Assembly (NCBI GenBank): GCA_964270895.1
Contig: OZ185435.1
Length of the DNA stretch: 64,000 bases
Strand: one strand, 5' to 3'
DNA from: Podarcis filfolensis
Lineage: Eukaryota
Each line of letters opens with the position of its first letter. Position 1 is the stretch's first letter. The notes under the pieces were generated by a model. That model saw nothing but the letters and a program-made list of their open reading frames with translations. It searched no databases and was not told where the DNA came from. The position numbers and the translations under genes were made by a program. Positions 25,201 to 51,540 of this stretch are shown here, piece after piece.

Positions 25201-28200
25201 TCTGGGAAAGGTGGTTGCCTAATTTATGAGAAAATGCACAGGAAGCCCTTCGAACACTCAAGATGTGCATTAAACAGAAAGAGACTCATGTGCTCAGATA
25301 GATGCTGCTTCACTGCTTTTACCTTGAACCAAACATTCTCTGATAAGAATATCATACTGCAGAGTAATATTTACCACAGTGCGTGAAGGGTTTTTCCTAA
25401 ACTGCTCCCGTGCTAGAATGAGCTGATACTTAGTAAGTGCAGGAATTTCACGTTTAGACAAAACCTGGAGCCTAATCAGTCGGCCGGCAAATGTTTCCAG
25501 GACCTAAAAGTAAAACAAAGGACAGAAAGGAAATTGGATGCGTGTCACAATCACAGCCACACTGGGACCCGTACAGAAGAGGAAAGCCACCCTATTTCTG
25601 CCCCATTTAAATAAAACTTGATTCATTCCTCAGAAATATATTGCTGCGTATTTATGTAAAAAGCTTACATAAATGGCATACATTAGATGAAACGTAAGAC
25701 TGTAAGACATTTTCTTTGGGAGGCAATTATTATTCCAGTTAAATAAGGTTATTGATGCAATCACACTGTGATGGCTTAGGAAGAAACTCTGATTCTAAGG
25801 TGTTATGCTGAGGTGACCCTTTTAATTTTCTCGTGTTCAATCTCTTGACCTGGTTTTACGTAAAAGATATTGATATGGCCAGAATTCACCCTGCGTGTAA
25901 CACTGTCTGCTCAAGTCATCTTTCACAAAACAAGCTAAAACGGATTATTAAAACAAACAGCAGGATCCAGTCACCTGGAGCTTCAGACTGGAACTAATGA
26001 GTTCAACAAACATAACCTACTTAGAAACAACACAGTGGCCATCTTCACTCCGCTATCTTTGGCAATCTCCTCATTATTTTTACAGAAAGAATAAATGATG
26101 TAAGGAGGGAGCTGCAGCCCAAGATAGGAAGAGAGGTAGTAAGGGGACACCTAGCCACTTTAAATGAATTCAAATCTCCAGGGCCTGATGAACTGCATCC
26201 TAGGGTACCAAAGGAGCTTGTGGATGTAATCTCAGAGCCTCTGTCTTATGATCTTTGAGAATTCTTGGAGAACAGGGGAAGTCCCTACAGACTGGAGATG
26301 GGAACATGCTGTCCCTATCTTCAAAAGGGGGCGAAAGGAAGACCCAGGTACCGTAACTACCGACCGGTGAGCTTGACACTGACACCAGGGAAGGTTCTAG
26401 AAAAGATAATTCAACGGTTGGTCTGTGAGCATTTAGAAAAGGATACTGTGATTACTAAGACCCAGCATGGGTTTCTCAAAAATATATCGTGCCAGACCAA
26501 TTGATTTCTTATTTCTTTTTTAAAATGGAATTACAAACTTGGTGAATCAGGGAAATGCTGTACACACAGTGTATCTTGATTTGAGTAAGGCTTTTGACAA
26601 AGTCCCCCATGATATTCTCGTGAGGAAGCTGGTAAAATGTGGGTTGAACGAGGTGGATTTAGGTGGATTTGTAGCTGGTTGACTGACCAAACCCACAGAG
26701 GACTCATTAATGGCTCCTCCTCATCCTGGGAAAAAGTGACAAGTGGGGTGTCGCAGGGTTCTCTGTCCTGGGCTTGTTGTTGTTCAACGTCTTTATAAAT
26801 GACTTGGATGAAGGAATTGAGAGGATGCTCATCAAATTTGCAGGTGACACCAAACTGGGAAGGGTAGCTAATGCTGCAGAAGACAGACCCAGAATCCAAA
26901 ATGGCCTTAACTGGGCGCAAGCCAACAAAATGAATTTCAATAGGGACAAATGTCAGGTTCTGCACTAAGGCAGGAAGATCCAGATGCACGAATATAGGAC
27001 GGGGGACACTTGGCTTACTAGCAGTACGTGTGAAAAGGATATAGGGGTCTTGGTGGACCACAAGCTGAACATGAGTCAACAGTGTGATGCAGCAGCAATA
27101 GGAAAAAGCTAATGCTATTCTAGGCTGCATCAACAGAAGTCTAGTGTCCAGATGAAGGCAAGTCATAGTCCCGCTCTATTCTGTCTTGGTCAGACCACAC
27201 CTGGAGTCCTGTGTCCAATTCTGGGCGTCACAATTTAAGGAGGATGTTGACAAGCTGGAAGGTGTGCAGAGGAGGGTGACCAAGATGATCAAGGGTCTGG
27301 AAACTAAGCCTTACAAGGAGCGCTTGAAGGAGCTGGGTATGTTTAGCCTGGAAGAGGCGAGACTGAGAGGAGATACGATAGACATCTTCAAATGTTCTGG
27401 GTTACAACTTGCATCAGGCCCCCAGAGTACCATAAAATCAGTCTAAGGACAGGATTCTGCCTGCATTTTACAAACCTTTTTTATGGAATGGAGGCAGGGA
27501 AATGGACACAGCATGGTGCCCAGCACCACCTTCTTCACATAACTGCACATGATTGATACAGGAGACTCGTGATTAAAAATGGGCTTTGTGCAGGACTTAT
27601 TCAAGGCCAAGTACCCTGTACTATTGAATTACTATTCTAAAAACAGCTATTCAGGTACAGTGGTACCTGTTACGAAAAAGGAGCAATGCTGCTGAGTGCT
27701 CCAGATGGCTGGAAAGCCAAACAGGATGTTGATGTTTTGGGACTGTACCGTGGGAAGAAGGGACAGTCTATTATGTGCTCTGAGCACCGGATGTTAGCTC
27801 AGAGTGTCACATGACCCTGTACTGGAAGTACATGGGTGGAGTTATTCTCTCTCTGCAGCTGGGTATCAGAGAGTGCAGACATGTTGTTCTCTGCACTGAG
27901 GAAAGACAGAAATAAAGGCATGTAAATACATTTCTGTCTGTCTCTTTCCCCTCCCTGGGGATGGCAGGGAGAGAGGGAGGAGGAGTGGCTGTGTTCTTCT
28001 CACGTTTGAAGAAGGATCGGCCGATAAAGACCTCGCCTTGTCTTGCCGGGAGTCGCTGACGGGGGAGGCCAACAAGGAATCAAGCCGGGCACCTGGAGAG
28101 TGGCCAAATTCCTCTGAAGATATGGCTTGATATCAACATATGGTAGCAGACGCTGCTGGTTATCTGATCCATGGGAATCAGCATGAGAGGTGAGAGGTTG

Positions 28201-31200
28201 ATGGATCGTGTGCCATCCTCTGCACCAAGGAAAGAAGATAACGTCTGCAATTGCAGCCAGAAGCTGAACAGACGGCTGGCCCCAAGAGGGGGTGTTTTCC
28301 AAGCAACGGAGCCCCAAAAAGGTATGCTGAATATCGGGCTAAAAGTGTGAATGCAGATTGATTTATTCTCTGGTTCACGAGAGAGCTGCGTTTGGAAAAA
28401 CAGCTCTGAAAGAAAGGCTTGCATACCAGAAATTCTTGTGGCGAGATAAGGATGAAAAGTATGCACAGTTGCTAAGCAACGACAGTCAGGGCAGTGGAAA
28501 ACTACTGACACCTGGGGCTGGCTCAGTCAGAGCCGGGAAAGCGAAAGTTGTTTTGACTTTGAGACAGCTTGGAGAATTGCCTGCCTGAGAGAGAGGCAGA
28601 AAGACAGCTCAAAAAGGAGCTTTTGGGATTTTAACTAGCTCGAGGGTGTAGAGCTGAGACTTGGATTCAAAATGGATCCCAAGAAGGGGGGAGCCTTGCC
28701 TTACCCGCCTCTCCTGACTAATGACAATTATTCATCTTGGTCTGTAAAGATGAAGGCCCTGCTGCAGAATCAGAGGATTTTTGGGGTGATTGAGAACCCC
28801 ATCCCTCAAGCACCAACCAGAGGTTGGGAATCACAGAATGTGAAGGCCAGGACGGCTATAATTCTGTGTGTCTCGGATGATCAACTTGTGCATATTCAGG
28901 ATTTGGAATATGCGCGTGAGATTTGGGAAACGCTGCGTAGAACACACCAGAGAGATGCTGGCTCTTCAGCGTTGTTGTATTTTGAGAAGCTGACCAATCT
29001 GAGGCTTGCGCCTGATGGAGATGTTCAAGCGCACCTGACGGAAATGAAATATCTGCGCCAACAGATGGTGGAACGCAATTTCCGTCTGCAGGAGGAAGTG
29101 TTTTGCTTCATGATGATTAACAGCTTAAATCGGACTTACAAAACCGTTGCCAGTCAGCTGGGTTCCCTCCCCGCGAACGATTTCACCGCGGAAAGGGTGT
29201 GTGCCGTTGTTTTGAATGAACACGACAGGCTTGCTGCACTGGAGGTGAAGGACAGGGGGAGGGAAGAACGGAGTTCTAATTCCCCCACTGATGTTGCTAC
29301 TGGAGAGGATGCTGTAGCTTTGAACGTTGTCCGATGCTACAATTGCGGACAGACTGGGCATCTTCAGCGGAACTGCAAGAAGCCACGCCAGCCGAAAGGA
29401 GCGAAGGGCCGCTCAGCAAAGCCTGAGGCAGCAGGCAAAGGTCATACCAAGTCTTCGGTGAAACCTGCAAAGGCCCTGATGGCGAAAGGAACCACGCCAG
29501 ATGTTGGACACTCTTTTGTAATCGATACGGGCTGTAATTTTCATATGTCCCCACACAAGGCGCTCTTTTCAACGTTTAAGAAGCAAAGCTTCGCTGTGGA
29601 ACAAGCCAACGGTCAGAAGCTGGAGGCGACCGGGGTTGGATCTGTGTATCTTAAGAGTCTGAACTTGACAATAAACAATGTTTACTTGGTTCCTGAACTG
29701 AAGTTCAATCTGCTGAGTGTTTCGCAGATTGCAAAGAAAGGACTGAGACTGTCCTATGATGATAAGAGCTGCGAGATCTTCAAAGATGGAGAGTTATATC
29801 TTTCTGCCAGACAGAAAGGTGGACTGTATTTGTTGGACTTTGAGCAAAGTGATTACATGGAATGTAATTCTGAGTCTAACATGATTTCTCTTGCAGGTGT
29901 GACCAAAACGAGCGCCAAGAAGGTGGCCAGGGTCGACAGAGCGTTTCAGCGGGTGTATGCTGATGTGATTGGTCCTCTAGAACCATCTAGAGGCAATGCA
30001 AGATTTTATCTTGTGTGTGTGGATCATTTCTCTAACTTTGTCTGGGTTTATGTGTTAGAGAAACCACAGGAAGCCTTGGAAAGGTTTCAGGAGTTTTGTG
30101 ACAAAGTTAAAGACATGCATGATGCTAACATTGATTGTCTTTTGACAGATGAGAAGCAGATTTTTCTTTTACAGGATTTCCAGAGGTTCCTGCAGAAGAA
30201 GGGGATCAGACACAAGATTGCTGTTTCAGCGGAAGCGTGGAACAGGGGTGTTTGTGAACGGGTGAACAAAGAATTGCAAAAGGGGATGAATGCGCAATTG
30301 CTTAGTTCACATCTGCCACATGAGTACTGGGCCGAGTCTCTAATGTCGTATTGTTATACGAAAGTGAGAAAGGTTTCAAAAGAGTTGGGAAGTTCTCCTT
30401 TTGAGAAACTGTTCCAGAGAAAACCTTCTGTTGCCCATTTCAAGGTTTTTGGGTCTCATGTGAGGACAGAAGCTCCAGGTGGAGTAAAGAATGCCAGAGG
30501 CATTTTTGTGGGATATGAAAAGGGTCTCTACAGAGTAATTTTGTCTGAATCTGGTCAGGTGATTCTCACAAAATTTCTAGAGAGTGCTCCTGAAAAGGAG
30601 AGAGTGATAGCACACACATTTCCCACAGAGGACGATTCAGATGATGATGATGATTTCACACAGTACAGTGGTACTGAGAGTGATGACACTGATAGCTCGG
30701 AGAGCTCAGTTGTCACAGTCATTGAGAGGAAATCTCACACAATGGATAGACCTTCACAGGTGAAGGATGAGCCACTGTTTGCTGTTGGAACTGGTTCTCC
30801 TAAGAGTCCTGAGACAGAACCAGTGAGCAGAGAGGACCAGCACCTCATACGCAGGTCTGAGAGAGTCACAAAGGGTGAACCACCCAAAAGGTACTCAGAA
30901 GAGTATGCTAATTTAGCTGTTGCATGTGTTGCTGTTGTACACAACCGAGGACAGGTTGGAGCTGTGTCAAAGTCAGAGACAAAGACACAACAGAGAGTTG
31001 CTAGCCAAGGTAATGCAGATGCACTCATTCCTTGGAAGCCAGACAACCAGAGAGGTACACTGGGGAAACCAGTGGCGGGTAGTTCCAAGGGTGGAACTGA
31101 AACAACAGGGGAGTGTTATGTGTATAACAACTGTTTGTTTTCTTCTCTGGATCACGCTTTGCTTGCCGCAACATGCATTGATTCTTTTGGGGGAGGTTGT

Positions 31201-34200
31201 TACGAAAAAGGAGCAATGCTGCTGAGTGCTCCAGATGGCTGGAAAGCCAAACAGGATGTTGATGTTTTGGGACTGTACCGTGGGAAGAAGGGACAGTCTA
31301 TTATGTGCTCTGAGCACCGGATGTTAGCTCAGAGTGTCACATGACCCTGTACTGGAAGTACATGGGTGGAGTTATTCTCTCTCTGCAGCTGGGTATCAGA
31401 GAGTGCAGACATGTTGTTCTCTGCACTGAGGAAAGACAGAAATAAAGGCATGTAAATACATTTCTGTCTGTCTCTTTCCCCTCCCTGGGGATGGCAGGGA
31501 GAGAGGGAGGAGGAGTGGCTGTGTTCTTCTCACGTTTGAAGAAGGATCGGCCGATAAAGACCTCGCCTTGTCTTGCCGGGAGTCGCTGACGGGGGAGGCC
31601 AACAAGGAATCAAGCCGGGCACCTGGAGAGTGCCAAATGCCTCTGAATGACAAGGCTTGATATCAACAAGTTCTCGGGTTAAGAACTTAATTCGTTCTGG
31701 AGGTCCGTTCTTAACCTGAAACTTTTCTTAACCTGAGGTACCACTTTAGCTAATGGGTCCTCCCGCTGCCGCTGCACCACTGGTGCACGATTTCTGTTCC
31801 CATCCTAAGGTAAAGTTCTTAACCCAAGGTACTATTTCTGGGCTAGTGGAGTCTGTAACCTGAAGCGTCTGTAACCCGAAGTACCACTGTACCAGCTATG
31901 AATATATTTTTTTCATTTACAACCAACCAGTTGATGATTTTTGACTGAAAAGGTTGAGCATGCAGAACTGGGAGAATTATGAGTATGACTCCAATTTGCA
32001 GTCACGGTAACAGATGAATGATGGTGCCCTCAGGCTAAAGGATGCCCTTTCTTCCATGGCAGCCACACAAGGAAAAACAGGGCAAGTCAACACTGGTTAC
32101 ATCCTTTTCCACCTTCGAACTGTGCAGCATCCTCCTTTTCTTCCTCCCTGGAAGCTGAGGCTGAGAAGAAGTCCAGTTGCACAGCGCAGATAACTGAGTC
32201 AGCTCCCTGTGTGATCAAGTTCAGCTTGGCAGCCTCCAAATGCCAGCAGCCTCCTCCACTACATTGATGAGTCAAGATGGCAGGATGCCATGTTAATTTC
32301 AGAGCAGCACACACATGTTGACACATTGCAAAACAGACTGAGGATCTACTTGTCAGTCTGATATGGCAACATGGACTATTTTTGTTTCTGCTCCCTCCAA
32401 CTTGCCTGGCTTTCTCTTTCCAGAGTTTGTGCAGAGGAGAACAAAAAGGGAAGAGCTGCTAAGTACCACTTTCCTATAAAGCATTCCACTCAGAAACCCA
32501 ATATTCTGTTCAGGAACCCCACATAGGTGAATCGCCCTGAGACCTCCGGGTATAGGGTGGCATATAAATTCTAACAACAACAATAACATTAGAAAGAGGC
32601 ATCTCTGCTTTGGAGGGAAATGAAGGAACTGTCAAATCCACTTCGCTAGAAAAATGCATATCTTGGCTGAGTGGGGATGTGAACCCTAATCTCCTAGCCT
32701 AACCACTCTCATCACTACACCACTCTGCCTCAAATTATTTGCATTTAAAGGGCAACTTTGCGAAGGACCATCACCAACCCCCGTCTTTAATCCTGGATAG
32801 GGTGCGTGGACAGGGACAGGGCGAGAGGCTCCCGCCAGTCAGTCCATTTCCTCCTGTGACCCCACAAACAAAGGGAGGTTTTCAAAAATAACAGAGGAGC
32901 TTCCTTCTGTCAAAGGAATGTCCTCTACCTCACCTAGGGAGAAGCAAAGCAAAGCAGAAAGCAAGGTAGCCAACAGAAAATGGGGAACAAGTACTCTGAG
33001 CACACACACACCTGCTTCCTTTCATTGCCTTTATTATTTGTTTATATTTATTTCATTTATATCTGGCTTTTTCCTCCAAAGAGCTCAAGGTGCCATACTT
33101 GGGTCTGCTGACGGAAGCCCAGGGGAAGGGCAGAGCCCTGGGCAGCTGACCCTGCTGCCTCTGCCTCCCTTTCACGGGACAAGCAAGAACAAAGGCTCAC
33201 AGTCCGAGCCCCGATCTGCCCAGAAGCAGCCGACTGAAATGCACATTGGAAGGGGGTGCTTTATTTATTGCGTTTTCCTCGGAGGCGGTGCACGCACTTC
33301 TTCCCCTTCTCCATTTCACCATCACAAGGGCCCTGCGAGGTAGGCTGGGGGTGGGGTGGGGGGCTTGCTGGGAGCCCCTTGGTACCGGGGAAGGGAGTGC
33401 CAGTCACCTGGTTCCCTGGGCAGCGGGGCTGCGGTGGGGGGCACAGGCTGGCGCCCTAGCCGGGCACCTGCAGGCTCCTCCCGGGTCCGACGTGCCTGGA
33501 GGGCGTCGCCGCGGCTGCCCGGGCCCCCTCCCCTCCGCTGGGCAGGGCAGCTTAAGAAAGCAAGCGCCGCCCCGGGCGCGGGCACTTGCCAGCGCCGCCT
33601 CCGCGCGATCCAGCCGGCCATGGAGAGCGAAGCGCGCACTTGCCACCTGAGCGGCGGCGGCGACCCGGCGCCCCCGGGCGCCATCACGCTGGAGGAGCTG
33701 GAGAGCGGCGGGGCGGCCGGCGGGGACGAGGCGGCGGGGGCGGCCGGCTGCCCGGACTCGGCGTACGGCAGCAGCCTGGAGGACAACGCCGGCGACGAGC
33801 AGGAGCAGGAGCGCCTGCTGAGCTACTGGCAGAGCGTGGGCCGCGGGCACCGCGTGGACGTGCCCCGGGGTAAGCCAGGGGGAGCCGGCCGCGCTCCGGG
33901 ACGGGCAGCGCGCTCTCGCCTTGGCGCAAAAGGCGCGGACTTCACTCGCGCCCCAGCCCGGCTAAGCCTCTCGCCGGCGGTTTAAGGGGCTTTCGGTCTT
34001 ACAAGGATTAGCTTGGGAAGGGGGGCGGGGGGGCTGCTGGCCGGCAAGCGCCTGCTCCGGGCTTCCGAAGGCGCTCGCCACTCGAGGGACAGGGAGCGCT
34101 TGCAAGGAACGGGCTCCGTGGAGCAGGAGCGTTAGGAAGGGATCCCTTCCCTGGCAGGCCGCCGTCTTCGCCAGCTGTTTCCCATTCACGATCAGGGGGA

Positions 34201-37200
34201 AGTTAGGGCTGCTTTCAGCTTTGGTAGAGGGAATCTAAGCAAGGGGATGGAGCCGGTGCCCTGCGGAAAGGAGGCAGAGCTTTCGTTTGTTTTTTAGTTT
34301 AGAGAAAAGGCAAGTGAGAGGCGATATGAGAGAAGCCTGCAAAACTAGGCATGGCAAGAGTGGACAGAGAGGAAAGTTTTTCTCCCCCTCCCCGTACAAT
34401 ATAATTCATGGGCATCCAATGAGGCTGAATGTTGGAAGGTTCAGTTCCGATAAAAGAGCACACAGTGCAGAGTTACAGCGTGGAACTCCCTCCCATAGGA
34501 CACAGGGAGGATTAGACAAATTCATGGAAGAGGAGAGGGCTACCCTGGCTACTAGCCACAATGAGGCAGCAGCAGTTCTGAATGTCAGCTGGTGGAGGCC
34601 ACAGGAGGGGAGAGTGATGCTCATGTGCTCAAATCCAGCTTGTGGGTTCCCCACAGGCCTCTGTTTGTCCACTGTGAGATGCTGGACTAGATGGTCCAAC
34701 CGCCTAATTCAGCAGGCTCTTCTTACGATTACAACAGGATGGGCACCTGCTTCCACAAAGCAGAGCATGGATACCATACTTTCTACCAAAAACCTTTTGC
34801 CACCTGCTCGTTTATGTTTGTCACTCAGCGTGTTTCCAAGCCATGAAATTAATTCCTCCCACCACGGAGTTTCCAGAGAGTTCATTCGATGGAAGGGCGA
34901 GGAGAGACGGTGTGCCAAAGTGGTTTTGTGTAGGACTGTGCACTGGCCAGTGTTGCCCTGCAAGTCTGCAGTAGGAATTGCCTTGCTGAGTAAGAGAACC
35001 ACCCAGTTTAGCCCAGTAATCTGCCTACAACGGGTGATGTCCTGCCCAGCTCTGTAGGAGGAACACCTCATACTAGTTGCCCAAGCTAATATGATCTACT
35101 GTGGCTGGCAGCAGCTAGCATGGTCTTAGGGTAAAGAAAGGTCTTTCACATCACCTTCCACCTGATCCTTTCAGATGCCATGGGGATTGAACTTTCTGCA
35201 CACAAAAGAGATGCTCTACGCCCCTCCCCAGAGATGATCATTGCCCCCAGCACCTGCAAATGTGATCTTTGGTGCTCCTGAAATTGGATGCTCCATCCTT
35301 GGCTATTACGATTAATATCCACTGACAGATACATCTCCCACTAATTGTTTAATCCTTTTTGAAAACCATCTAAGTACACACACCCCGGCTGACACTTAAT
35401 GCTATTATTGGTTTGACATCACAGAACTACAGTGAAGGCTGAAGCTGGCCAAAGGTTTCAAAAATGCTCTGCAAGGAAACCCAGCATGGTGCATTAGTAG
35501 TTTTGAGGGGAGTCTGGGGTGGCGGAAGCGCATCAAATTATGGCAATGGAGCAGGATACTCTGTCCATCACAACTTAAGACCACAGAAAGTAGTGGTGAA
35601 GAGAAACTAGAACTATTATCTACAGGGAAATAGCAGACAAATGCTCTAGCACATAATGGCAAAATCCTGCTTACCACACTGCAAGGGGACATAAGCATCA
35701 AAGCTACTTTGGGGTGGGAGGTGTTTACTACCTTCCACAAGGCAAAGACTGTCCAGCCACTTGGCCTCAAGAGATGAATATATTCTATCATAACATACCT
35801 ATGACATAAGTGTCGTCCTACAATGAAAGGTTTAATGGATGATCAGTAGCACTCTGATGGGGGGGGTGTCAGAGAAGTCTCCCTCCAAGCCATGCCCAAT
35901 TATTAAAACACCAATGAAAGGTCATACGGTGACAACAAACTGCTTCAGTGATGGTTGTAACATAGCCCACTCTTAAGCATTTGATGGCACAGCAAAAATC
36001 AGAACCAAACATGGGACCAACCACTGCTTCTCCCCAATGGAGATAGAGAAGTGGTTTGAAGTTGGTTTGGTTAGCAACACAATTGGTTATAGTAATTAAA
36101 GGTTAGTTAATGGAGCAATCTTACAACTAGGGTCCTGTGCAGAGATGTCATCCACACCAGTCTGTAATGTCTATGTCTTGTACACATTTGCTGTGCTAAT
36201 GCATTACATTGAACTAAAAGTCACATAGACCAGTCAAAATAAGTTATGCAAATATTGCAATTAATTTTACTTTGGCATCAAAACAAAATTAGTTGGTTGT
36301 TCTTAAGTCCAATAAATATCAGTGTATCTTGGAAACAAGCCTTTTCCAAACTGTGTTCTATTTCTTACTACCTGTGTTCTAGTCTCACCCACATAAGAAT
36401 TTTCATATGTGAATCAGGCATATTTACTTCTATAAACAATTTAATCACATTTTTACAGATATGGCAGAGCCAATCCAACAGCTGACCAGAAATAACCATC
36501 CTCAGGAGAGAGAAAGTGTTCCATTTGTTGTGATAGCCCGTAAAGAACAGGTATCATCTCTTCATTAAAATACACCTTCATGCATTATAGCAAGAGCGGG
36601 CAGAGAAACAGGCATGGCTTCTACTTTTGTATATCTAACAAGCAGTCAGATTTTAGTGAATGGAAAGTGGTCTTAAAACTAGTTTTTAAAAGCTCTCTTT
36701 GTTCCTTCCCAATTTTAATTGTGCTCTAAAAGGAAAAAAAATGTTCCCTACCTAACATGTTCTAACCCTACTGCAGAGGTCTAAAAATGTATTTTGTCAA
36801 TGGATGCACAAGTGGCCTCAAAGGCATGAAGTAATGGTCAGCTAATGCTAATATTCCCCCCTGCCGCTTCCTCATGGAGAAAGGTAGCCTAGCCTTAGCT
36901 GTAACCCCTGGGTTGGATGAGTTCTCCTCAGCCTAGCTGCATTCTGAAAGACCAAGAGGGCAGGTAGACTGTGTATATATGAACAAATTCTGTGTTATGA
37001 ATTACCCTATCCAGCCATCACAAATATTGATTATTTCTGAATGAATTCACCCCTTTCAGAGCCATACTCACAGTCTACAACAGTGGTGGATGTCAAATAC
37101 TGGTAGAAGTAAAAGCTTTCCTGAAGGCCCACCACCCGTGTGCCTTAGTCTTCCTTTTAACTCTTTAACTTGCCTTAGGGTGGTGGTATGTGGGTAATAA

Positions 37201-40200
37201 ATTATAACAGCAACTTTTGAAACTTTACAGCTTGGGAATCTTCTTTATGAAAAACGCCACTATGAAAAGGCGAAATGGGCTTGCGTCAAAGTGCAAGAAA
37301 AGCAGTATGAACAGAGCATATGCCTAGGATTCATGAAGATTATGAGATACATTTGTCAGCAGAATTCATCAGGTAAATAATTGTTAGACACACATTTTGT
37401 TCTGACTGCACCACATTAGTTATAAATGCGCCATTTGATCCTGCAAGAATTCCCAAATGCAAAATTCCCCAAGGCTGCAAAATTTGATTCCGCATGTGTG
37501 ATTTAACTTCACAACTAGCTGACGGGTAATGTCAGGAAATTACTAATGACGATATGCTTTTCTCAGGCCTATACTTGGGAATGACTGTTCCCATTGCAAC
37601 CATAGTTCGCACCAGTGAGAGCACTCCAGGCATCACAAGATTTGTGACTGTAGCATATTACCTCCCCAGTGGGCTGCAAGAACAGCCACCTGCACCCAAT
37701 GATCCGGATGTTGTCATTGAAGAGTGGCCTCCAACCATTATTTATGCCAGGTAAGAATCAAAAGTTGCCTATCTAAGTGCCAGGGTTGATTAGCTGAAAA
37801 TCTCACCATCATGACACATTCTTTTCCATGGATTCATTCCAAACACTGAACAATTCAAAACCTAAATCCTCTCATCCAAATACACCGGTACTCAGCATTT
37901 CATGTTTACTTTGTGCTATTTAACCTTGACTGTGAGTCCTGCAACAGCTGCTCCCTGCCTTGCTGGCGTTTTCCCACCTGGCCTGATGCCAAACCAAGGC
38001 TTTGCATGTTGTCTGAACTGGTGCACATGGTGAAACTCTCCTCACTAACCATGAGCTGTAACCATGGTTTTTTCATGCACCTGGAAAGGAGCAAAGCCCC
38101 TTTGACCTCACCCTCTGAGAACCCTCACACTCCCAGTAAGCCTAGTTTGGCTTAGTGTGACAAACCAGGCAAATGTGTGATTATAGATAGCTATTTAATT
38201 TTAATTAAGCAAGGAGCAGTCTGAGACAAAATCAAGCAAGTGTTAAGACCTTGTCAGGTATCTTGGCTCCAGCTACACAGTGCCTTCTGGATATTTCTTT
38301 AAGTTGATGAAAAAGCAGGATATGTTTGTTTAAGCACATTTGTATCCTGGTATTAGGCTTCTAAAGCAGCTTAACTATAACTACCAACACACACACCAAC
38401 TAAAATCTCGGTCTTGAAATCACTGGATTGTATCCAACTCACTCAACTAATTCTTTCTCCCTCTTCTTCCCTGCAGCCCCTTGCTACCCCCCCCCAGCCC
38501 CACTCAAAAGCCTCTCCAGAGGGTCAAAGGTGGTTGCCCAGACCCTTTGGAGGAGCTTTTTATGGGGGGCAGGAGGGGAAGGGGAAGATTGGTTATGCGA
38601 GCTGCCTTCTACTCACCCTAAATGTATTTAAAATTCTGTTTTCATTACTGAAATGTTTGCTATTCTGGGTTCCCATGGGAGCAAGGACACCAGACTACAA
38701 GTGCAGAATATCTGTATCCAATAGTTGTGTGGAAACAAACACAAAAATCAACAAGCACTGAGAATGATACATGGCATGCAGAATTCAGCCTCTAACAATC
38801 TCAACACTCTCCCCAGCCCACTTTTTATATGTGTGTGTGCGTGCACACACACACATATATAATATAAACAGAGAAATGGGTAGTTTCTAGCGTTTGTAAC
38901 TTCAGGGATCTTGTTGATGTCTTTCAATCTACACTTTCAATCTACAATCAAGGGGTTGCTGTAAGTCTAAAACGAATAAAATATTATTTTAAAATGGCTT
39001 GTTCACAGGGCCTTCAGAGGAGTCACCAACGAAACGTCCATTGCAAGAGAAATTAATATGCTGGCCGAACTTCTGGAGAGTCCTGAGCTGTGTTTGCAAG
39101 ATACCTTCATAGTTGCAGGATACACAAATCCAGCTGCTACAAATCGACAGAACGAAATATGGTTTCTTGAAAGACCATAGCTGGCTATTTTTGAGCTACA
39201 AGACAGCCAAGTTCCATTGACGGATCACCCATGAAACACGCAGGTGAACTCTAGTCAGCTAGCTGGAATGATCAAGAATGATATGTAGCCATTAACTTTA
39301 TAAAGCCTATTTCCTAAGAAAACACGAATATCACATTCCACCAGCATAGCCTGACAGACAAACCAGCTTCCTTCCTCAGCTATTAAGAAGGCAAACTTGG
39401 AGTGTCTGTTGCCAGTTTTGAAGGGTTTTTCCTAGCTGTTGCTTCAGTTATGTATAGTCACTAAGATTTCAAGCACTTTCACCAAAATTAAGACACAGGA
39501 GATATTCTGTATTAAGAGAAATAAAGTGTTCTGTTCCCTTGGCATCCCTCCCAACTCTACACTTCTGTGATTCTTCCCAGTATTTATTCTGACATGCAAG
39601 AGTGCTTCACTAACTCAATGGAAGTTGAAGTTGTAGGTAAAACTGCACAATTTCTGAACATTTTATCTGATGCTACACAATCGCCATTCATTTGAGAGAG
39701 GCTACAGAGGTAGATCCACCAAAATGAACTGCATTGTCTGTGAGCAAATAATACCCTAGCAGATGCTAACAGTAATTATTCCTCATTATTACACAAGTTT
39801 ATTTTTATAAATACAATGCTATTGACTATTTTCTTCTGAATATCTACTATAGGTGAACAGAAATTGCTACCTCCTTTATCAACAGAAATAGTGTTTTATT
39901 GTACAGTGGTACCTCTGGATGCAAACGGGATCCGTTCCGGAGGCCCGTTCGCAACCTGAAAAGAACGCAACCCGTGTCTGTGTGGGTCACGATTCGGCGC
40001 TTCTGCGCATAACGTCATTTTGCACATCTGCACACGCGCGAGCAGCGAAACCCGGAAGTAACCCTTTCTGGTACTTCCAGGCCGCTGTGGGACGCAACCT
40101 GAAAACGCGCAACCTGAAGCAAACGTAACATGAGGTATGACTGTATACATTGTTGATATCTTGGCTGTGAGTCCTGGAAGACTTGTTCCCTGCCCTGCAG

Positions 40201-43200
40201 GCCTTTTCCCACCTGCCCTGGTAGGGCGAGGCCCGGACTGACTCCAGCTGCAAAAGCTGAGGCTGCTGAACAGAGTCCAGAGGGTTTTGTTGGAGGTGGG
40301 GTGTTGCTGTTAATTTTTTGTATCTTTATTTTGGTTCATACAGTTTGTGCGGCAATTGTTCAGTTTGGTTGTGTACTTTTTGATGTTTTGTTTATGACTA
40401 CTGTTGTTTTGTTTGTAGCTATGTATTTTTTATATGTTGTAAGCCACCTTCAGCACAGTTTAAACTTTGCTGGCCCACAAGCAAATAAAACGATTGACTG
40501 GTATTTAATTTGAAGGATTATCAAAAGGAAATTTCACATTCTGAGAATACCATGTTTTTACTCATTTTGAAATTATCCACTTAGCCAGCTAGGATACAAA
40601 ATGAAATCTTTCGTAAGTCGTATTAAAAAAAAAACAAATTCAAGTCTAGAAATAATAAAGCTGGAATCCTAATTGCTAATTTACCTGTGAAAGATATACG
40701 TCATATATTGTTTACTGTTGGAAGTTGCCATGAATAAAAACTTTATTGCTCTGTGTTATCCCAAGTTTATTATTTATTTCATAAATTTACACACTATTTG
40801 ATTGCAACCTAAAAGCAATTTTGATATATTAGTTAAGTCACCGGCATCTTTTTCTAAAAAAAGTTAGCAAAGCGTCCAGGGGAACTTTTGTTGCTCTCAG
40901 TTTCCCCACTTGTATTGGATACTGTGATTTATCCCTCTATCTCACACGGACGGCAGGACCGCTGCAACTCTGTTTTCCTGCCCACGTCAGCCCCGAGCAG
41001 AGCTGCACAGGGGAAGCGCTGACTGGACGACAGGATCTATTTCAACACCACAGACAGAATTTTATAAAAATAATCAGTAAAATTACTTGTATTGGAAGAG
41101 GAATGCATTGTACAACCTGGATAATATGGAACAGAGACTTTAATTTCAGGAAGTCATATTAGATAGGAAATGGGCATAGGACTTGGCAATATAGTTGTCT
41201 AGGGTCACCTGGCCCTCCTCCCCAGTCAGGTGGGAGCATTGCAAAAGTTTCCTGCATTGCACTGGGTTCGACAAGATGACCCTCAGGGTCCCTTCCGACT
41301 CTACAATTCTATTATTAAGGAGCTCGGGTTATGGAGCAATCCTCAGAAACTATTTTCAATAGCCCACATGCCCCGGGCTTACAGAGCAGCTGCCACTATG
41401 TGCTTGTAAACTACCAACCTGGGGATGTATCATACCAATTCCATTTAGCACCCACAAGTACAAAAAAAATTGAACAACTGGCCTCTACAAGTTCTCTGAA
41501 AGGAACTGCTCCTTCTGCAGCTGTTCTCCCATCTGTCACAGCACACCCGTCTTTAACCCTACACAGACACAGAGCCTCAAGGTAGACTCCGCTAAAACGC
41601 ACACAGAAATCAAACAAACCTCTGTAGAAGACAGTAAAAGTGGCCTGAAATACCTCTGCATCACACTATTACTTGCTCAATGCACTTTTATGTTTTGTGT
41701 GGCTTTTCGACAATGATGGCTTCATTTCAAGACAGGCTCACCTGAGACTGAATTGAAAGCATTGCGACACCTCTGGGAAGCCACTCGCACACATAAAGCA
41801 ACAATACCACTTGCATTTTTTCACCACCTAAGAAAAACCAGGACAATGCCCATAATCCCTGCAGCCAGCAGAAGATCCCAACCCCAGTTCATGGCTATGT
41901 AATATACACTGGTCAGACTGGAGCTCCAAAGGCCACTTTCTCCTAGGGACAGGACCCACTTAAGGAAAACAGGACGACAGTTTCCTGAGGCTCCTTCACT
42001 GCATTCTTACAAGGAAGCCAACACTAGAATCGTCCACTCAGATGTCATTTAGCGAGAGACTAAAAACAACCGTCACGATCCGGTACCAGTGACATTTTTG
42101 AAAGATTAAAGCAGCACTTGGAAAACAAATCCAAAAACAAATCCAGTTTCACAGAACAAATGAAGACGCCTCTTTAGAAGAATAAAAACAAGCTGCTTTC
42201 AACAAATGTTTCGCCACCATTTCTGCTCTGAAGTCCTGCCTGCTGCCATTCTTACCCACGCAATACGAAGTTTCTGACTCACCTTGATGTAAGCATTACG
42301 AACTTCAGCCAGCTCCTTCCCAAGTGGAACAACACATTTTTCAACCTGCCGCTGGTGAGTGTAAGGCTGGATGTCAGGAGAATCTTCAGTACATAGTTCT
42401 ATGTGTGAAATCAGCAGGTTGGAAATAACTTGTTGCACAGCCTGCAAAGAAATGGTAAAAAGTCACCATCTGGCTGTATTTTACTTAGCATCATGTTAGC
42501 ACAGTAAAAATCGGGCATACAGTAGCGCCTCGGGTTACCTTGCCCTCGGGTAATGCAAACTTCAGGTTGCAAAAGCGGCAAACCCGGAAGTGTCCATCCC
42601 CCCGCGCATGCGCAGTAGTGCTCTACCACCACGCGCATGTGTGTAACAGTGATCCTCAGGTTGCGAAAACCTCGGGATCCAGCCGGACCTCCGGAACGGA
42701 TCCCGTTCGCAACCGGAGGTAGAACTGTCGTTTAATGTAGATACTATATGTTATTATATATTACACTGTATCAGGGGTGTCCAACTTCCAAGAGACTGAG
42801 ATCTGCTCCCACTATAAATAAACTGGCAGTGATGTACCCATTGGAATGACCAGAGTTGAGATTTTTTTGGAAAGAAGGACCAAAGTTGTTGAGCTGTTGG
42901 ACAGGCCTGCACTATGTCTTGTAACATTTACATCCCTAGGTTAGATTAATAATATTATCACAAGGACGCAAGTCCAGCACCCTGTTCTCACACCCGCCAA
43001 CCAGTTGTCCCAAAGGCCTTGAGCAGGACAGAAGCACTCTCCCAACTCGCAATTGCTAGCAGCTGGCATTCAGAGGTGCCACAGATGGTGCAAGTGGAAC
43101 ACCAGCTGACTGGGGGCTTCAGCGAGATGGGTGTCCATCAATATGCAGATGATACCCAGCTCTACCTCTCTTTCAAATCAGAACCAGTGAAGGCAGTGAA

Positions 43201-46200
43201 GGTCCTGTGTGAGTGCCTGGAGGTGGTTGGAGGATGGATGGCGTCTAATGGATTGAAGTTGAATCCTGACAAGACAGAAGTACTGTTTTTGGGGGACAGG
43301 AGGCGGGCAGGTGTGGAGGATTCCCTGGTCCTGAATGGGGTAACTGTGCCCCTGAAGGACCAGGTGCGCAGCTTGGGAGTCATTTTGGACTCACAGCTGT
43401 CCATGGAGGCGCAGGTCAATTCTGTATCCAGGGCAGCTGTCTACCAACTCCACCTGGTACGCAGGCTGAGACCCTATCTGCCCGCGGACTGTCTCGCCAG
43501 AGTGGTGCATGCTCTAGTTATCTCCCGCTTGGACTACTGCAATGCGCTCTACGTGGGGCTACCTTTGAAGGTGACTCGGAAACTACAACTAATCCAGAAT
43601 GAGGCAGCCAGACTGGTGACTGGGAGCAGCCGCCAAGACCATATAACGCCGGTCTTGAAAGACCTACATTGGCTCCCAGTACGTTTCCGAGCACAATTCA
43701 AAGTGCTGGTGTTGACCTTTAAAGCCCTAAACGGCCTCGGCCCAGTATACCTGAAGGAGCGTCTCCACCCCCATCGTTCTGCCCGGACACTGAGGTCCAG
43801 CACCGAGGGCCTTCTGGTGGTTCCCTCATTGCGAGAAGCAAAGCTACAGGGAACCAGGCAGAGGGCCTTCTCGGTGGTGGCGCCCGCCCTGTGGAACGCC
43901 CTCCCATCAGATGTCAAAGCGATAAACAACTACCTGACATTCAGAAGACATCTTAAGGCAGCCCTGTTCAGGGAAGTTTTTAATGTGTGATATTTTAGTG
44001 TTTTTTGGTTTCTATGGAAGCCGCTCAGAGTGGCTGGGGAAACCCAGCCAGATGGGCGGGGTACAAATAATAAATTATTATTATTATTATTATTTATTTA
44101 TTGAATTTATATACCGCCCTATACCCAGATGTCTCAGGGCAGTTCACAGAAAAGATCAACATAAAAACCACAAAATATATAATCAAAATAAAAACAACCC
44201 AATAACGCCCTCCTCCTAAAAAGAGCCACATTTTAAACAGGCATAGGATGCCAAAGCAAGCCCCTTCATCCCCAGGTCCTTGGATTAACAGGACTTGAAT
44301 TACCTTTGTGTCACTGCCAGGAGTAGCACTTAGAGCCAAAATACGGAACTGCCGCGTATATTTGCATAATTCTTTCACAACCTGAAGAAAGAAATAGCTT
44401 TCATCGCCACTGTTATGCTACTGTATCCGAATATTCTACAAGACAGGCTCCCAAATGACATGCAAAAGCCCTCCTAATTCACACCTAAAGCTCATCAGAG
44501 CAGCATTTTATTTATTTTTCATTGGCTTGCTGTTTCTGACATATGGGGGGGTGTTGGAGAGAACAAACAATATCTCCTGGCTTGGATGCAACGCTAATAC
44601 AGGGTTCATGGTTGGTTTCTTCTATATGCTAAGAGAAAGAGACCAGCAGCACAGAAAGCCATGTTGATTGCAATGCTCTACTTGTTTACGGTGACCTGTG
44701 AACTGGGGATTGAGACAGCTAGCTTTTGCTTCCCAGTTAAATCACAGGACCTCAGAGCCATCTAGAGGCACAAAACAGGCATCCATCTGATACTTCTGCT
44801 GCTAAACTTCTTGTAAATATTGCAATAAGAAAACCCCAAAGTACAGTGCTTTTTTCTGCATAATACAGCATATGAAAGACTTCAAGTTAAAAACAACCTT
44901 TCAGGACACAAACTTCACTTTCCCACTACTCTTCCACTTGTTCAGATTACTTGGTCTCCAAAACCTTATTCAGTTAGGAACCAACTAGGCTGGGAACTGG
45001 TTAGTTTTAACAAAATTAACAGTTTTCTTGAACCCCTTGCTTCATGGCATTTTTAATATCACTTTTAAAGTAAGGATCTGACATACATAAATCCTCAGAA
45101 AGTCATAATCAAACCCCTTACCACGAATCTAAATTTATAGTTAAAAATTTATGTTTCAAGTTGCAAACAGTCACCCTACCTGACAATAAGCATGATTTCC
45201 AAGAGCTCTGTGGGCTTCATCAATAACCAGACATTTAATTTTCACTGCAGGACACACTCCACGGGAAAGGTCATTTGCCATTATCTGAGGCGTAAGAAAG
45301 AAAACCCTCTTATTTTGCCAGATTTCTTTCCGATCAGCCACTTGGGTACCTCCTGAAACAACACAAGCAAGCATTTAGAAAGGCACCTAAAACCCCACAA
45401 TGGTTTCAGTGGCGATTCACAGAAAGGCCACGCTTCAGCAGTGTTTGCTGCCAACAGATCCATTCTTACACTTAAAACAAAGGGGTCCTTACATTTCTAG
45501 CCTGAAGCCAGTTTTCCATGTTAGAGCATCTTGGCGCAAAAGGCAAAATATGGCACATATCACATGTGAAAAGAAGACATTGGTCCAGATGCTTATTGTG
45601 AACTGCCCTAGAACTAAATCTGGCCAAGGGAAATTCCTTCTAGCTCTATAATTCTTTGATTATTATTTTTTAGCTGAGATTCCCTTGCCTACCTCTGCAG
45701 TGCCTGAAAACCATCAGGTCCTGCATCCGCAGCAGTGACCAGAGGAGGAATGATGCTGGGAGGAGTGCAGAGAAGAAACGCCCTGGTGCACCTGCAGGAG
45801 CGCAACTGTACGCCTTCCTCTGCCCCAAGTGTGTCTCTCCCGCATCAACCTCTGAAGCCATGACAGGTGCTGCAACTCTCCAACCACTTGTTTTTATTCC
45901 TCCACTGTCTCCCCAAGTTTTTAGCTGTTCTTAATCTTATCCGTAAACTGCCTTGAGCCCCTGTAAGGGGAATAAATTTTATTTATTTATTTATTTTTAT
46001 TATTAGGCTCCTAACCCCCACTGTTCATTATTACTATTATTGTTGTAAGCCAGAAAATAGCTTATCTCCCGAGTTTATTCCAATAAAACTCAGAAACGTG
46101 AGGAGTTAAGGCTCCAATGTTGTTTATTGCAAAGCAATAGGTTACAGTCAGATCGTTCCGCAAAACTGCAACCCTGCCCAGTGGTCCAGGCAGTGGTATT

Positions 46201-48093: not shown

Positions 48094-48370
48094 GCCGCCG
48101 CCGCCTTCCCCTCACCAGCGGCTCCCCTCAGGCAGCGGCCAGCGGAGCAGCCGCCATCTTGAAACGGCCGCTCGGCCGCCCTCAAAAAGCCGCGCCATCC
48201 CCGCCCCGGGCGGCTGCCAGCCGTGATTGGCCGGACGGCCGCCTGGGCGGGGTTTCCCCAGAGGCTCACGTGGTGAAGGGGAGCCCGGGAGCGCATGCGC
48301 CGAGCGCATCGTGACGCCGCCTGTTTCCCGACCCAGTTTGGTTTCAGTGGAGTTCGCCGCGTTTGCAAGA
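47640..48370 (-). promoter_or_regulatory. FANCM CpG-island promoter
   Basis: CpG-rich. YY1-like GCCGCCATCTTG (48150-48161), CCAAT (ATTGG 48226-48230), GC box (48245-48252), E-box CACGTG (48267-48272), NRF1-like GCGCATGCGC (48291-48300). Confidence 0.8.
47670..48093 (-). CDS. FANCM: FANCM exon 1 (coding part)
   Basis: ATG at 48093, [18 protein letters not shown]...LPTGLGKT...RHMAALT-G, donor GTGAGG. Confidence 0.93.
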
Positions 48371-48524
48371 AAGATAGAGCGAGATCAGGAAGGTAATGGA
48401 GAGCCGTAAGTTGAAACGTACGGGAGCTTGAAGCCGCAAGAGAGTAGGCTGAAACAAAGGAAAAATCATATGAACTTTCTCTTTTTAAAATAATATCTGC
48501 AATAGTGGTTCTTTTTTTTTTTAA

Positions 48525-48695
48525 TTGCTTTTTATTGATTTTCCAACACGACAAAAATTACACATTGCAATTAAAACACGCACACAAAAACAGATTTCCA
48601 AATAAACCAAGTCTGGCAAGGCAAATCCCCCTCTTTCCTTACTATCTATCAGTAATTTATGTTTTATCCTGTTTTTGCTTTTGCCTTGCCAGATA
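48525..48695 (-). mobile_element. Short L1-clade remnant with A-tail
   Basis: Translates to IWQGKSKNRIKHKLLIDSKERGGFALPDL, resembling the post-RT L1 ORF2 motif; followed by AATAAA and poly(A). Confidence 0.5.
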
Positions 48696-50849: not shown

Positions 50850-51277
50850 ATATCTATGGACCTCTGCAGAGAGAGCGGAGCTGCGCTAATAGCAGCAGAG
50901 GCGCAGCGAGCCCTACCCAGCATGCACCGGGGGGCCCCTTAAGAAGCTCCGCCATTGGCCGGTCGGTCTCCGCTCACCCCGCGCGGACTACATTTCCCAG
51001 CATGCCGAGCGGGCGAAGCGGCGGCGTAAGGCACCCGCGGGCGCGCTGGGAAATGTAGTCCCGGCTTCGTGAGGGAGCGCCGGCTCGTGTGAGGAGGCGA
51101 GGCCATGGCGGCCCCCGCGCGGCCCTGGAGCCCCGAGGAGCTCCGCGGAGACGCCCTGCCCAAGAAGGAGATCGTCCGCTTCCTGCAGGAGCAGGCGGCG
51201 CACAAGGTGGGCGCCCGCTCGGCCTCCCTTCACACGTTCGCGGGGACACGCGTGTCGGGCGGAGGGGCCGCCGCAGC

Positions 51278-51310
<33 letters not shown>

Positions 51311-51540
51311 GGCCAGGGCGGGAGACACGCGAGGAGCGGGCGGGGCCGCCTCCCGCCCGACACGCGTGCGGAGAGAACGTCTGAACGCGCGTGTCCCGCC
51401 AGCGCCTCCCGCCTCCCTTTTTCCTTCGACCTCGTGGCGCGCGGCATGGGCTTATCCACGGAGCAGAATGGCGAGGGTGTTCGGGGTCCCCCGAAGGTCA
51501 TCCAGCCGGCCGCCCCCTTGGCCAGCCCAGCTCCTGCCCT
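50850..51540 (+). promoter_or_regulatory. FKBP3 CpG-island promoter
   Basis: CpG-rich; CCAAT box; two inverted ZNF143/SBS-type motifs GGACTACATTTCCCAGC (50985-51001 and 51045-51061). Confidence 0.8.
51105..51206 (+). CDS. FKBP3: FKBP3 exon 1
   Basis: [34 protein letters not shown]; GCCATGG; GT donor. Confidence 0.93.

What the first reader, a model, noticed from the sequence alone, without database searches (positions are those of the whole stretch)
33620..39525. Complete SOUL/heme-binding gene hidden antisense inside FANCM intron 4
Seen: five short exons, mostly missed by the ORF track, splice into an intact 279-aa protein with its own CpG island and poly(A) signal. Exon 1 adds an acidic Gly/Ala-rich extension with the motifs ITLEEL and [11 protein letters not shown] ahead of the SOUL fold. 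Known: the SOUL/HEBP family binds heme and porphyrins. From memory the protein resembles teleost soul4, and I know of no such gene in human FANCM. Inference: an ancient paralogue kept nested in a DNA-repair gene in reptiles and probably lost in mammals, with possible transcriptional interference between the two genes.
Basis: partly seen in the sequence, partly recalled or inferred. Interest (0 to 1): 0.7.

Follow-up and report, generated by a model that had tools for sequence, protein, structure and literature searches.

The report
Lizard soul3 gene inside FANCM intron
This is a real, intact and transcribed SOUL/heme-binding-family gene lying backwards inside intron 4 of FANCM, but it is the already annotated vertebrate gene soul3, and it has sat in that same intron since before lampreys and jawed vertebrates split.

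Summary
Five GT-AG exons on the + strand (33620-33869, 36459-36550, 37231-37372, 37567-37750, 39009-39180) add up to 840 nt, or 279 aa plus a stop. The gene has a CpG island over exon 1 and an AATAAA at 39520. Spliced contigs from four public runs, from related species, show all four introns removed exactly at these borders.

- **Not hidden or new:** Podarcis muralis has a near-identical annotated protein, called "heme-binding protein 1-like". Orthologues are annotated in lizards, turtles, crocodilians, birds, amphibians, lungfish, coelacanth, ray-finned fishes, a chimaera and lampreys.
- **Orthologue of soul3, not soul4:** soul4 is the sister paralogue. HEBP1 and HEBP2 are distant (26-29% identity).
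- **Nesting is far older than reptiles:** the gene lies antisense, directly after FANCM exon 4, in ostrich, milkfish, elephant shark and sea lamprey. Gene calls also place it inside FANCM in reedfish and toad.
- **Mammals:** no mammalian protein is among the 120 best hits. This fits loss in mammals, but I did not test it at DNA level.

The protein has a confident SOUL fold. Ahead of it lie about 108 disordered, acidic residues with conserved motifs that match no Pfam family or solved structure. Function is untested.

Verdict: an ordinary, already annotated gene with a notably ancient nested position.

The parts
33400..34100 (+). CpG island and presumed promoter over exon 1 of soul3
   Evidence: GC 0.77 and CpG observed/expected 0.92 over 33400-33950, against 0.16 in a control stretch. 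The transcription start was not mapped: contigs begin inside exon 1.
33620..33869 (+). soul3 exon 1, coding part: 83 codons plus 1 nt. It encodes the acidic Gly/Ala-rich N-terminal extension with ITLEEL and [20 protein letters not shown].
   Evidence: The first in-frame ATG is at 33620 and the donor GT at 33870. 77/83 residues match P. muralis P0001. The joint 33869|36459 is seen in contigs of X1, X5 and X10.
36459..36550 (+). soul3 exon 2, encoding (D)[30 protein letters not shown]
   Evidence: AG acceptor and GT donor. 30/30 residues match P0001. Joints on both sides appear in run contigs.
37231..37372 (+). soul3 exon 3: start of the SOUL domain, with the three invariant cysteines
   Evidence: 47/47 residues match P0001. 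The joints 36550|37231 and 37372|37567 appear in all four runs.
37567..37750 (+). soul3 exon 4: SOUL domain core
   Evidence: Pfam SOUL E = 4.8e-11 on this exon alone. 60/60 residues match P0001. Joints appear in all four runs.
39009..39180 (+). soul3 exon 5, coding part: C-terminal SOUL domain, with the TAG stop at 39178-39180
   Evidence: Pfam SOUL E = 8.4e-9. 54/56 residues match P0001. The joint 37750|39009 appears in all four runs.
39181..39555 (+). 3' UTR with AATAAA at 39520-39525. Transcript contigs of relatives continue about 400 nt further, to about 39957.
   Evidence: Poly(A)-signal scan. Contigs cover 39006-39554 and run on colinear with the genome (tables 7 and 8).
42283..42441 (-). 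FANCM coding exon 4 (approximate borders): upstream border of the host intron
   Evidence: Conserved with ostrich, chimaera, milkfish and lamprey FANCM. Reading frame and GTGAGT donor seen.
25387..25503 (-). FANCM coding exon 5 (approximate borders): downstream border of the host intron
   Evidence: Conserved with ostrich and milkfish. The frame continues ...AYIK|VLETFAG... from exon 4.

Best explanation
The stretch holds the lizard orthologue of the vertebrate gene annotated in fishes as "heme-binding protein soul3" (in tetrapods it is labelled HEBP1-like or HEBP2-like).

**Shown**
- It is an intact five-exon, 279-aa gene with a CpG-island promoter region.
- It is spliced exactly as predicted in RNA-derived contigs of related species.
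- It is under purifying selection.
- It lies antisense in FANCM coding intron 4, and it holds that position from lamprey to birds.
- The C-terminal 170-175 residues form a SOUL/HEBP fold. The first 108 or so residues are acidic, predicted disordered, and carry short conserved helical motifs: I-T-L-E-D/E-L, and R-L-L[25 protein letters not shown]. These motifs are shared with soul4 and absent from HEBP1 and HEBP2.

**Inferred**
- The protein is probably a soluble cytosolic binder of heme or another tetrapyrrole or hydrophobic planar ligand. It would hold the ligand in the SOUL cleft, as HEBP1 does, without a fixed axial histidine. I put this at about 0.5.
- The conserved N-terminal motifs probably serve as docking sites for partner proteins or for regulation; this is not tested.
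- The nested position is best read as an ancestral vertebrate arrangement kept by inertia and constraint on the host intron.
- The gene was probably lost in the mammalian lineage.
For: - **Gene model:**
- **Splicing:** all four joints are GT..AG at the predicted borders. They are seen in contigs of X1, X5 and X10 (organism A, three studies) and X9 (organism B). Contigs of 1509 and 1549 nt carry the exon chain.
- **Orthology:** there are 276 hits. The top 120 are all non-mammalian vertebrates, and the fish ones are named soul3. A lamprey orthologue shows 49% identity over residues 8-285.
- **Tree:** gnathostome soul3 forms a clade with 97/95 support that holds the lizard sequence. Soul3+soul4 has 100/99 support. 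HEBP1 and HEBP2 fall outside.
- **Synteny:** soul3 lies inside the FANCM gene call on the opposite strand in ostrich, chimaera, milkfish, reedfish, toad and lamprey. It lies directly after FANCM exon 4 in all four loci that came with DNA.
- **Selection:** against ostrich, chimaera, milkfish and lamprey, third codon positions differ 2.4-4.4 times as often as second positions. 54 alignment columns are invariant across 35 orthologues.
- **Fold:** Pfam SOUL E = 7.5e-44 over residues 109-282. The AF2 model has pLDDT of about 85-93 over most of the domain. Foldseek gives TM 0.80-0.82, normalised to the target, against heme-bound mouse HEBP1 and human HEBP2.
- **N-terminal motifs:** they are conserved, sit in low-confidence regions with predicted helices at 28-33, 65-80 and 90-100, and have no Pfam, PDB or Atlas relative.
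Against: - No ligand-binding data exist for any soul3 protein. Only one paper on the vertebrate gene turned up, a passing mention in a transcriptome list.
- The histidine at the position I recall as the heme ligand of SOUL/HEBP2 is His in lizards but Gln in birds, turtles and amphibians. Axial heme ligation through it cannot be a conserved feature.
- The RNA evidence comes from assembled contigs of related species whose library type is only guessed to be RNA. It does not come from stranded reads of this species. The transcript's 5' and 3' ends are not mapped.
- Loss in mammals rests on absence from a capped hit list and on my prior knowledge that human and mouse carry only HEBP1 and HEBP2. It does not rest on inspection of mammalian FANCM introns.
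- The lamprey protein sits weakly (91/61) on the soul4 side of the tree. It may therefore be a pro-orthologue of both soul3 and soul4.
Confidence: 0.9

Rival explanations
1. The protein keeps the SOUL fold but is not a heme or tetrapyrrole carrier. It acts mainly as an adaptor or regulator through protein-protein contacts made by its conserved N-terminal motifs and its helix-loop surface. This would parallel HEBP2, for which Bcl-xL and ALG-2 interactions are described.
For: - The putative axial His is not conserved.
- The most strikingly invariant stretch outside the fold is a 45-residue N-terminal motif block predicted as short helices within disorder, which is typical of docking motifs.
- HEBP2 has documented partner binding: PMC3174058 and PMC6321638 (listed).
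Against: - The SOUL cleft region is itself highly conserved.
- HEBP1 binds heme without an axial ligand (PDB 7OON title), so loss of the His does not exclude heme binding.
- The BH3-like residues of HEBP2 are not kept: Arg163 aligns with Glu and the loop is one residue shorter.
Confidence: 0.35
2. It is a decaying or non-functional relic (pseudogene) carried along in the FANCM intron.
For: Its absence from mammals shows the gene is dispensable in at least one lineage.
Against: - The 279-codon frame is intact, with canonical splice sites.
- Spliced transcripts are seen in four runs.
- Substitutions are biased toward third codon positions.
- The protein is 57-78% identical to orthologues across gnathostomes.
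Confidence: 0.02
3. It is a recent duplicate of canonical HEBP1 or HEBP2, as the database names "HEBP1-like" and "HEBP2-like" suggest. Alternatively, it is the orthologue of teleost soul4.
For: - Automatic names in tetrapod annotations say HEBP1-like or HEBP2-like.
- Soul4 shares the N-terminal motifs.
Against: - Identity to HEBP1/2 is only 26-29%.
- In the tree, HEBP1 and HEBP2 fall outside a 100/99 soul3+soul4 clade. Soul4 (teleosts, a turtle, birds) forms a separate 100/99 clade.
- Fish orthologues in the same FANCM intron are named soul3.
Confidence: 0.02

Closest known systems
Vertebrate "heme-binding protein soul3". Annotated examples include Podarcis muralis A0A670HKN3, Chanos chanos, Callorhinchus milii and Petromyzon marinus.
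   Same: - The Podarcis protein is 96% identical (268 of 279 residues).
- The five-exon structure is the same.
- The N-terminal ITLE(D/E)L and RLLxYWQxVGRGH motifs are the same.
- The position after FANCM exon 4, on the opposite strand, is the same.
   Different: Only species-level differences: small indels in the Gly/Ala-rich part of exon 1 and two substitutions in exon 5, relative to P. muralis.
soul4: teleost "heme-binding protein soul4", plus bird and turtle proteins labelled HEBP1-like or uncharacterized
   Same: It is the sister paralogue. It shares the N-terminal motif block and the conserved FMKLMRYIC and NEIWF segments.
   Different: - Identity is only about 40%, and it forms a separate, well-supported clade.
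- Its genomic location was not examined here.
HEBP1 (p22HBP; PDB 7OON, 2HVA, 2GOV)
   Same: Same SOUL fold (TM 0.75-0.80). HEBP1 is the family member for which a heme-bound crystal structure exists.
   Different: - 28% identity.
- It lacks the roughly 108-residue N-terminal extension and the three invariant cysteines (Cys139, Cys152, Cys163 in P0001 numbering).
HEBP2 / SOUL (PDB 3R8J, 4AYZ, 5GQQ)
   Same: Same fold (TM 0.80-0.82). It is the best sequence match among solved structures, at E = 4e-22.
   Different: - 26-27% identity.
- It has no N-terminal motif block.
- Its BH3-like segment (Leu158, Leu162, Arg163, Phe169, Asp170; PMC3174058) is not kept: Arg163 aligns with Glu, and the loop is shorter.

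Membership tests
SOUL/HEBP superfamily (Pfam PF04832) | Pfam SOUL domain above the gathering score | tested here: met
   Window exons 4 and 5 alone score 43.4 and 36.1 bits against a cut-off of 27. The full-length orthologue P0001 scores 150.2 bits over residues 109-282.
SOUL/HEBP superfamily (Pfam PF04832) | Distorted beta-barrel with two helices, superposable on HEBP1/HEBP2 | tested here: met
   The AF2 model of P0001 has pLDDT of about 85-93 over most of the domain. Foldseek gives a target-normalised TM of 0.80 to 7OON and 0.80-0.82 to 5GQQ, 4AYZ and 3R8J. The model is of the 96%-identical orthologue, not of the joined window protein.
SOUL/HEBP superfamily (Pfam PF04832) | Binding of heme or porphyrin | not testable with these tools
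   This needs recombinant protein and spectroscopic or calorimetric titration.
HEBP2/SOUL subfamily | Histidine at the YE-x-R-H-Y position. I recall this as His42, the reported heme ligand of SOUL; that is from memory, not checked in a paper here. | tested here: not met
   It is His in lizards and teleosts but Gln in birds, turtles and amphibians and Arg in the chimaera. It is not a conserved feature of the clade.
HEBP2/SOUL subfamily | BH3-like segment with Leu158, Leu162, Arg163, Phe169 and Asp170 (PMC3174058) | tested here: not met
   In alignment A2 the two leucines align, but Arg163 aligns with Glu and the following loop is one residue shorter.
Vertebrate soul3 orthogroup | Falls inside the soul3 clade in a family tree, with soul3-named proteins as best hits | tested here: met
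   for hit names. In one search the gnathostome soul3 clade has 97/95 support and holds the lizard sequence in a species-tree-like order.
Vertebrate soul3 orthogroup | N-terminal extension with ITLE(D/E)L and [28 protein letters not shown] | tested here: met
   Both motifs are present in window exons 1-2. L31, L73, W77, Q78, R82, H84, M92, A93, P95, I96 and Q98 are invariant in 35 orthologues.
Vertebrate soul3 orthogroup | Located antisense in the FANCM intron that follows coding exon 4, with a five-exon structure | tested here: met
   For the window. The same order is found in ostrich L001, chimaera L002, milkfish L003 and lamprey L004. Gene calls for reedfish and toad agree.
soul4 orthogroup | Groups with teleost soul4 in a tree | tested here: not met
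   Soul4 forms a separate 100/99 clade, at about 40% identity.

The most novel reading that the evidence does not exclude
The soul3-in-FANCM arrangement has been kept for more than 500 million years because the two genes are functionally coupled. For example, antisense transcription or the intronic CpG island of soul3 could tune FANCM expression. Under this reading the soul3/soul4-specific N-terminal motif block is a new, uncharacterised interaction module, and its loss in mammals, together with both paralogues, marks a real change in vertebrate heme or stress handling.
Probability: 0.1. Interest if true: 0.6.

Novelty: already known. Interest (0 to 1): 0.25.

Why it matters
- **As an annotation:** it adds nothing new, because the gene is in public annotation sets under several misleading names (HEBP1-like, HEBP2-like, soul3).
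- **The nested pair:** soul3 has stayed in the same FANCM intron, on the opposite strand, from lamprey to lizards and birds. That makes it one of the older conserved nested gene pairs, and I found no paper describing it.
- **The protein:** soul3 and its sister soul4 carry a strongly conserved N-terminal motif block that has no known relative. They are functionally unstudied and appear to be missing from mammals, which may be why they have been ignored.
- **Naming:** the finding also shows that tetrapod database names for this gene are wrong by orthology.

Tried and rejected
- **N-terminal extension:** I searched it for any known relative. Pfam at E up to 10 gave no family for four orthologues. 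A profile of the motif block against PDB gave a best E of 0.24, which is chance level. An ESM Atlas feature search that excluded SOUL clusters gave no usable hit.
- **Literature:** "soul3" returns plant and algal papers plus one bass transcriptome list. FANCM with "nested gene" and "intron" returns 0 papers. A search for heme-pocket residues of p22HBP returned nothing useful.
- **Loci not obtained:** the Xenopus tropicalis locus was withheld, Hemicordylus was not on record, and the reedfish and toad loci came without DNA.
- **Representative search:** I ran it because the mammal-loss claim rests on absence. It carries no taxonomy and collapses orthologues at 50% identity, so it cannot prove absence in mammals. 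It was still useful, because it supplied lamprey soul3, soul4, HEBP1 and HEBP2 for the tree.
- **Readings rejected:** pseudogene, recent HEBP1/2 duplicate, and soul4 orthologue (see rival explanations).
- **Conserved block at 25903-26062:** I considered it as a possible extra FANCM exon and rejected that, because it has stops in all frames.
- Exons were searched one by one by reference. The 96%-identical P. muralis protein P0001 served as the full-length proxy for searches, folding and the tree.


Full report
**What is in the sequence**

On the + strand between 33620 and 39180 there are five exons bounded by canonical GT..AG introns:

| Exon | Coordinates | Length (nt) |
|---|---|---|
| 1 | 33620-33869 | 250 |
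| 2 | 36459-36550 | 92 |
| 3 | 37231-37372 | 142 |
| 4 | 37567-37750 | 184 |
| 5 | 39009-39180 | 172 (includes TAG) |

The ATG at 33620 is the first in-frame ATG of a stop-free stretch. The lengths sum to 840 nt, or 279 codons plus the stop. The phases (1, 0, 1, 2) are compatible, and the three split codons read D, G and R.

Exon 1 sits in a CpG island. The stretch 33400-33950 has GC 0.77 and CpG observed/expected 0.92, against 0.16 in a control kilobase. Exons 4 and 5 alone each pass the Pfam SOUL threshold.

**The host gene**

The minus strand carries FANCM.
- Its first coding exon is in the ORF 47245-48093.
- Blocks conserved with ostrich, chimaera, milkfish and lamprey define coding exons 2, 3 and 4 at about 45362-45177, 44396-44301 and 42441-42283.
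- Exon 5 is at about 25503-25387, and the reading frame continues ...AYIK|VLETFAG... across the gap.

The SOUL gene therefore lies wholly inside coding intron 4 (about 16.8 kb), antisense to FANCM. FKBP3 lies head-to-head with FANCM further right.

**Is it transcribed and spliced?**

Contigs of four public runs were laid on 33560-39555. X1, X5 and X10 are organism A from three studies; X9 is organism B.
- All four predicted introns appear as GT..AG joints at exactly the predicted borders: 33869|36459 (three runs), and 36550|37231, 37372|37567 and 37750|39009 (all four runs).
- Contigs of 1509 nt (X10) and 1549 nt (X5) carry the exon chain: pieces on all five exons are listed for X10, and for X5 the exon 2 piece is not listed but both joints flanking it are.
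- The contigs are 90-99% like the window, with small in-frame insertions in the Gly/Ala-rich part of exon 1. They therefore come from related species, not this one.
- Their library type is only guessed to be RNA, but intron-less contigs in four runs are hard to explain otherwise.
- They continue colinear with the genome about 400 nt past 39555, so the AATAAA at 39520 is not the only possible 3' end.
- The 5' end was not captured.

**What gene is it?**

A word search with exon 1 (by reference, scored on the coding part only) found annotated proteins with the same N-terminal extension in lizards, turtles, birds and tuatara. The best was Podarcis muralis A0A670HKN3, "heme-binding protein 1-like", 286 aa. 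The window's exon peptides match it at 77/83, 30/30, 47/47, 60/60 and 54/56 residues.

I used this protein (P0001) as the full-length proxy. Its search returned 276 hits.
- The 120 best (at least 331 bits) are all non-mammalian vertebrates.
- They cover squamates, turtles, crocodile, birds, salamanders, frogs, lungfish, coelacanth, bichir relatives, gar, bowfin, many teleosts and the elephant shark.
- The fish entries are named "heme-binding protein soul3".

The exhaustive representative search and cluster look-ups added a lamprey orthologue with 49% identity over residues 8-285; UniProt also names it soul3. They also showed that the next-nearest group is "soul4" of teleosts, plus bird and turtle proteins labelled HEBP1-like or uncharacterized.

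**Family tree**

I built a maximum-likelihood tree of 34 sequences, rooted on an algal SOUL protein.
- A gnathostome soul3 clade (97/95 support) contains the lizard sequence in a species-tree-like order.
- A separate soul4 clade has 100/99 support.
- A soul3+soul4 clade has 100/99 support on a long stem.
- HEBP1 is the weakly supported next relative (82/70), and HEBP2 lies further out.
- The lamprey protein attaches weakly (91/61) on the soul4 side, so it may predate the soul3/soul4 split.

Identity to HEBP1 and HEBP2 is 26-29%. The other refuting condition, a recent duplicate of HEBP1/2, is not met.

**Age of the nesting**

Gene calls around the orthologues place soul3 inside the FANCM gene range, on the opposite strand, in:
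- ostrich
- elephant shark
- milkfish
- reedfish
- common toad
- sea lamprey

In the four loci that came with DNA, the order is always FANCM exons 1-4, then the five soul3 exons in the opposite orientation. Where the flank reaches far enough, FANCM exon 5 follows. The arrangement therefore predates the lamprey-gnathostome split. It is not a reptile feature.

**Selection and conservation**

Against ostrich, chimaera, milkfish and lamprey, third codon positions differ 2.4-4.4 times as often as second positions in exons 2-5. Across 35 orthologues, 54 columns are invariant. These include:
- three cysteines (139, 152, 163 in P0001 numbering) that HEBP1 and HEBP2 lack;
- a block in the N-terminal extension: L31 of ITLEEL, and L73, W77, Q78, R82, H84, M92, A93, P95, I96 and Q98.

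Soul4 and the lamprey protein share this block; HEBP1 and HEBP2 do not.

**Structure and function**

- Pfam places the SOUL domain at residues 109-282.
- An AlphaFold2 model built on the 35-sequence alignment is confident over most of that domain (pLDDT about 85-93).
- The model is poor before it (pLDDT about 40-63). Short helices are predicted at 28-33, 65-80 and 90-100, which coincide with the conserved motifs.
- The best structural matches are heme-bound mouse HEBP1 (7OON) and human HEBP2, with TM 0.80-0.82 normalised to the target.
- The N-terminal block has no relative in Pfam, PDB or the ESM Atlas.
- The histidine at the position I recall as the SOUL heme ligand is not conserved in the clade.
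- The BH3-like residues described for HEBP2 (PMC3174058) are not kept.

My best reading has two parts. The first is a soluble binder of heme or another tetrapyrrole-like ligand in the SOUL cleft, HEBP1-style, at about 0.5. The second is a disordered acidic N-terminus whose conserved helices dock partners or regulate the fold. A non-heme adaptor role is the main rival, at about 0.35. Neither has been tested in any species. The searchable literature on vertebrate soul3 amounts to one mention in a transcriptome list.

**Mammals**

No mammalian protein appears among the 120 best hits, although mammals are the most densely annotated vertebrates and an amniote orthologue would be expected near 400 bits. 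The mammalian proteins recovered are HEBP2 orthologues, at 31-33% identity. This fits loss in mammals, and it fits my prior knowledge that human and mouse have only HEBP1 and HEBP2. The claim stays probable, not shown.

**Verdict**

The most interesting results are the correction to soul3, the more than 500-million-year conservation of its nested antisense position in FANCM intron 4, and the orphan N-terminal motif block shared with soul4. Transcriptional interference with FANCM remains speculation.

Noticed in passing
window 27668-31632: An LTR retrotransposon lies in the same FANCM intron. It has two 435-bp direct repeats that are 100% identical (27668-28102 and 31198-31632), which suggests a recent insertion. 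They flank an intact 890-aa ORF (28672-31344, + strand) with copia-type gag, zinc knuckle, Pol beta-barrel and integrase domains but no reverse transcriptase. The ORF runs into the 3' repeat.
   Followed up: partly
window 25903-26062: A block of about 160 nt is conserved between the lizard and ostrich (L001 5029-5188). It lies about 400 nt upstream of FANCM exon 5 and has stops in all frames, so it is probably a conserved non-coding element in intron 4 rather than an exon.
   Followed up: partly
L002 7547-7996 versus 13813-14262: The elephant shark locus carries a second copy of soul3 exons 2 and 3 about 6.3 kb upstream of the called gene. This is either a partial tandem duplication or an assembly artefact.
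   Followed up: no
window 34290-34700: A repeat in soul3 intron 1 attracts many unrelated contigs with loose ends and irregular joints in all four runs, at much higher summed depth than its flanks. It is probably a transcribed interspersed repeat.
   Followed up: no
window 43019-43990: A 323-aa ORF on the + strand in FANCM intron 3 matches the C-terminal part of a reverse transcriptase (RVT_1), and a similar element occurs in the milkfish locus. It is probably a LINE fragment.
   Followed up: no
window 47200-48600 and 50900-51700: FANCM exon 1 and FKBP3 exon 1 lie head-to-head about 3 kb apart, each in its own CpG island (observed/expected 0.90 and 0.98).
   Followed up: no
proteins P0093/P0100 (Myripristis) and P0054/P0118 (Megalops): Some teleosts carry two soul3 copies. 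Several tetrapod gene models (Zootoca P0020, Euleptes P0033, both 195 aa) start at the Met of exon 2 and miss the GC-rich exon 1, which is probably an annotation or assembly gap.
   Followed up: no
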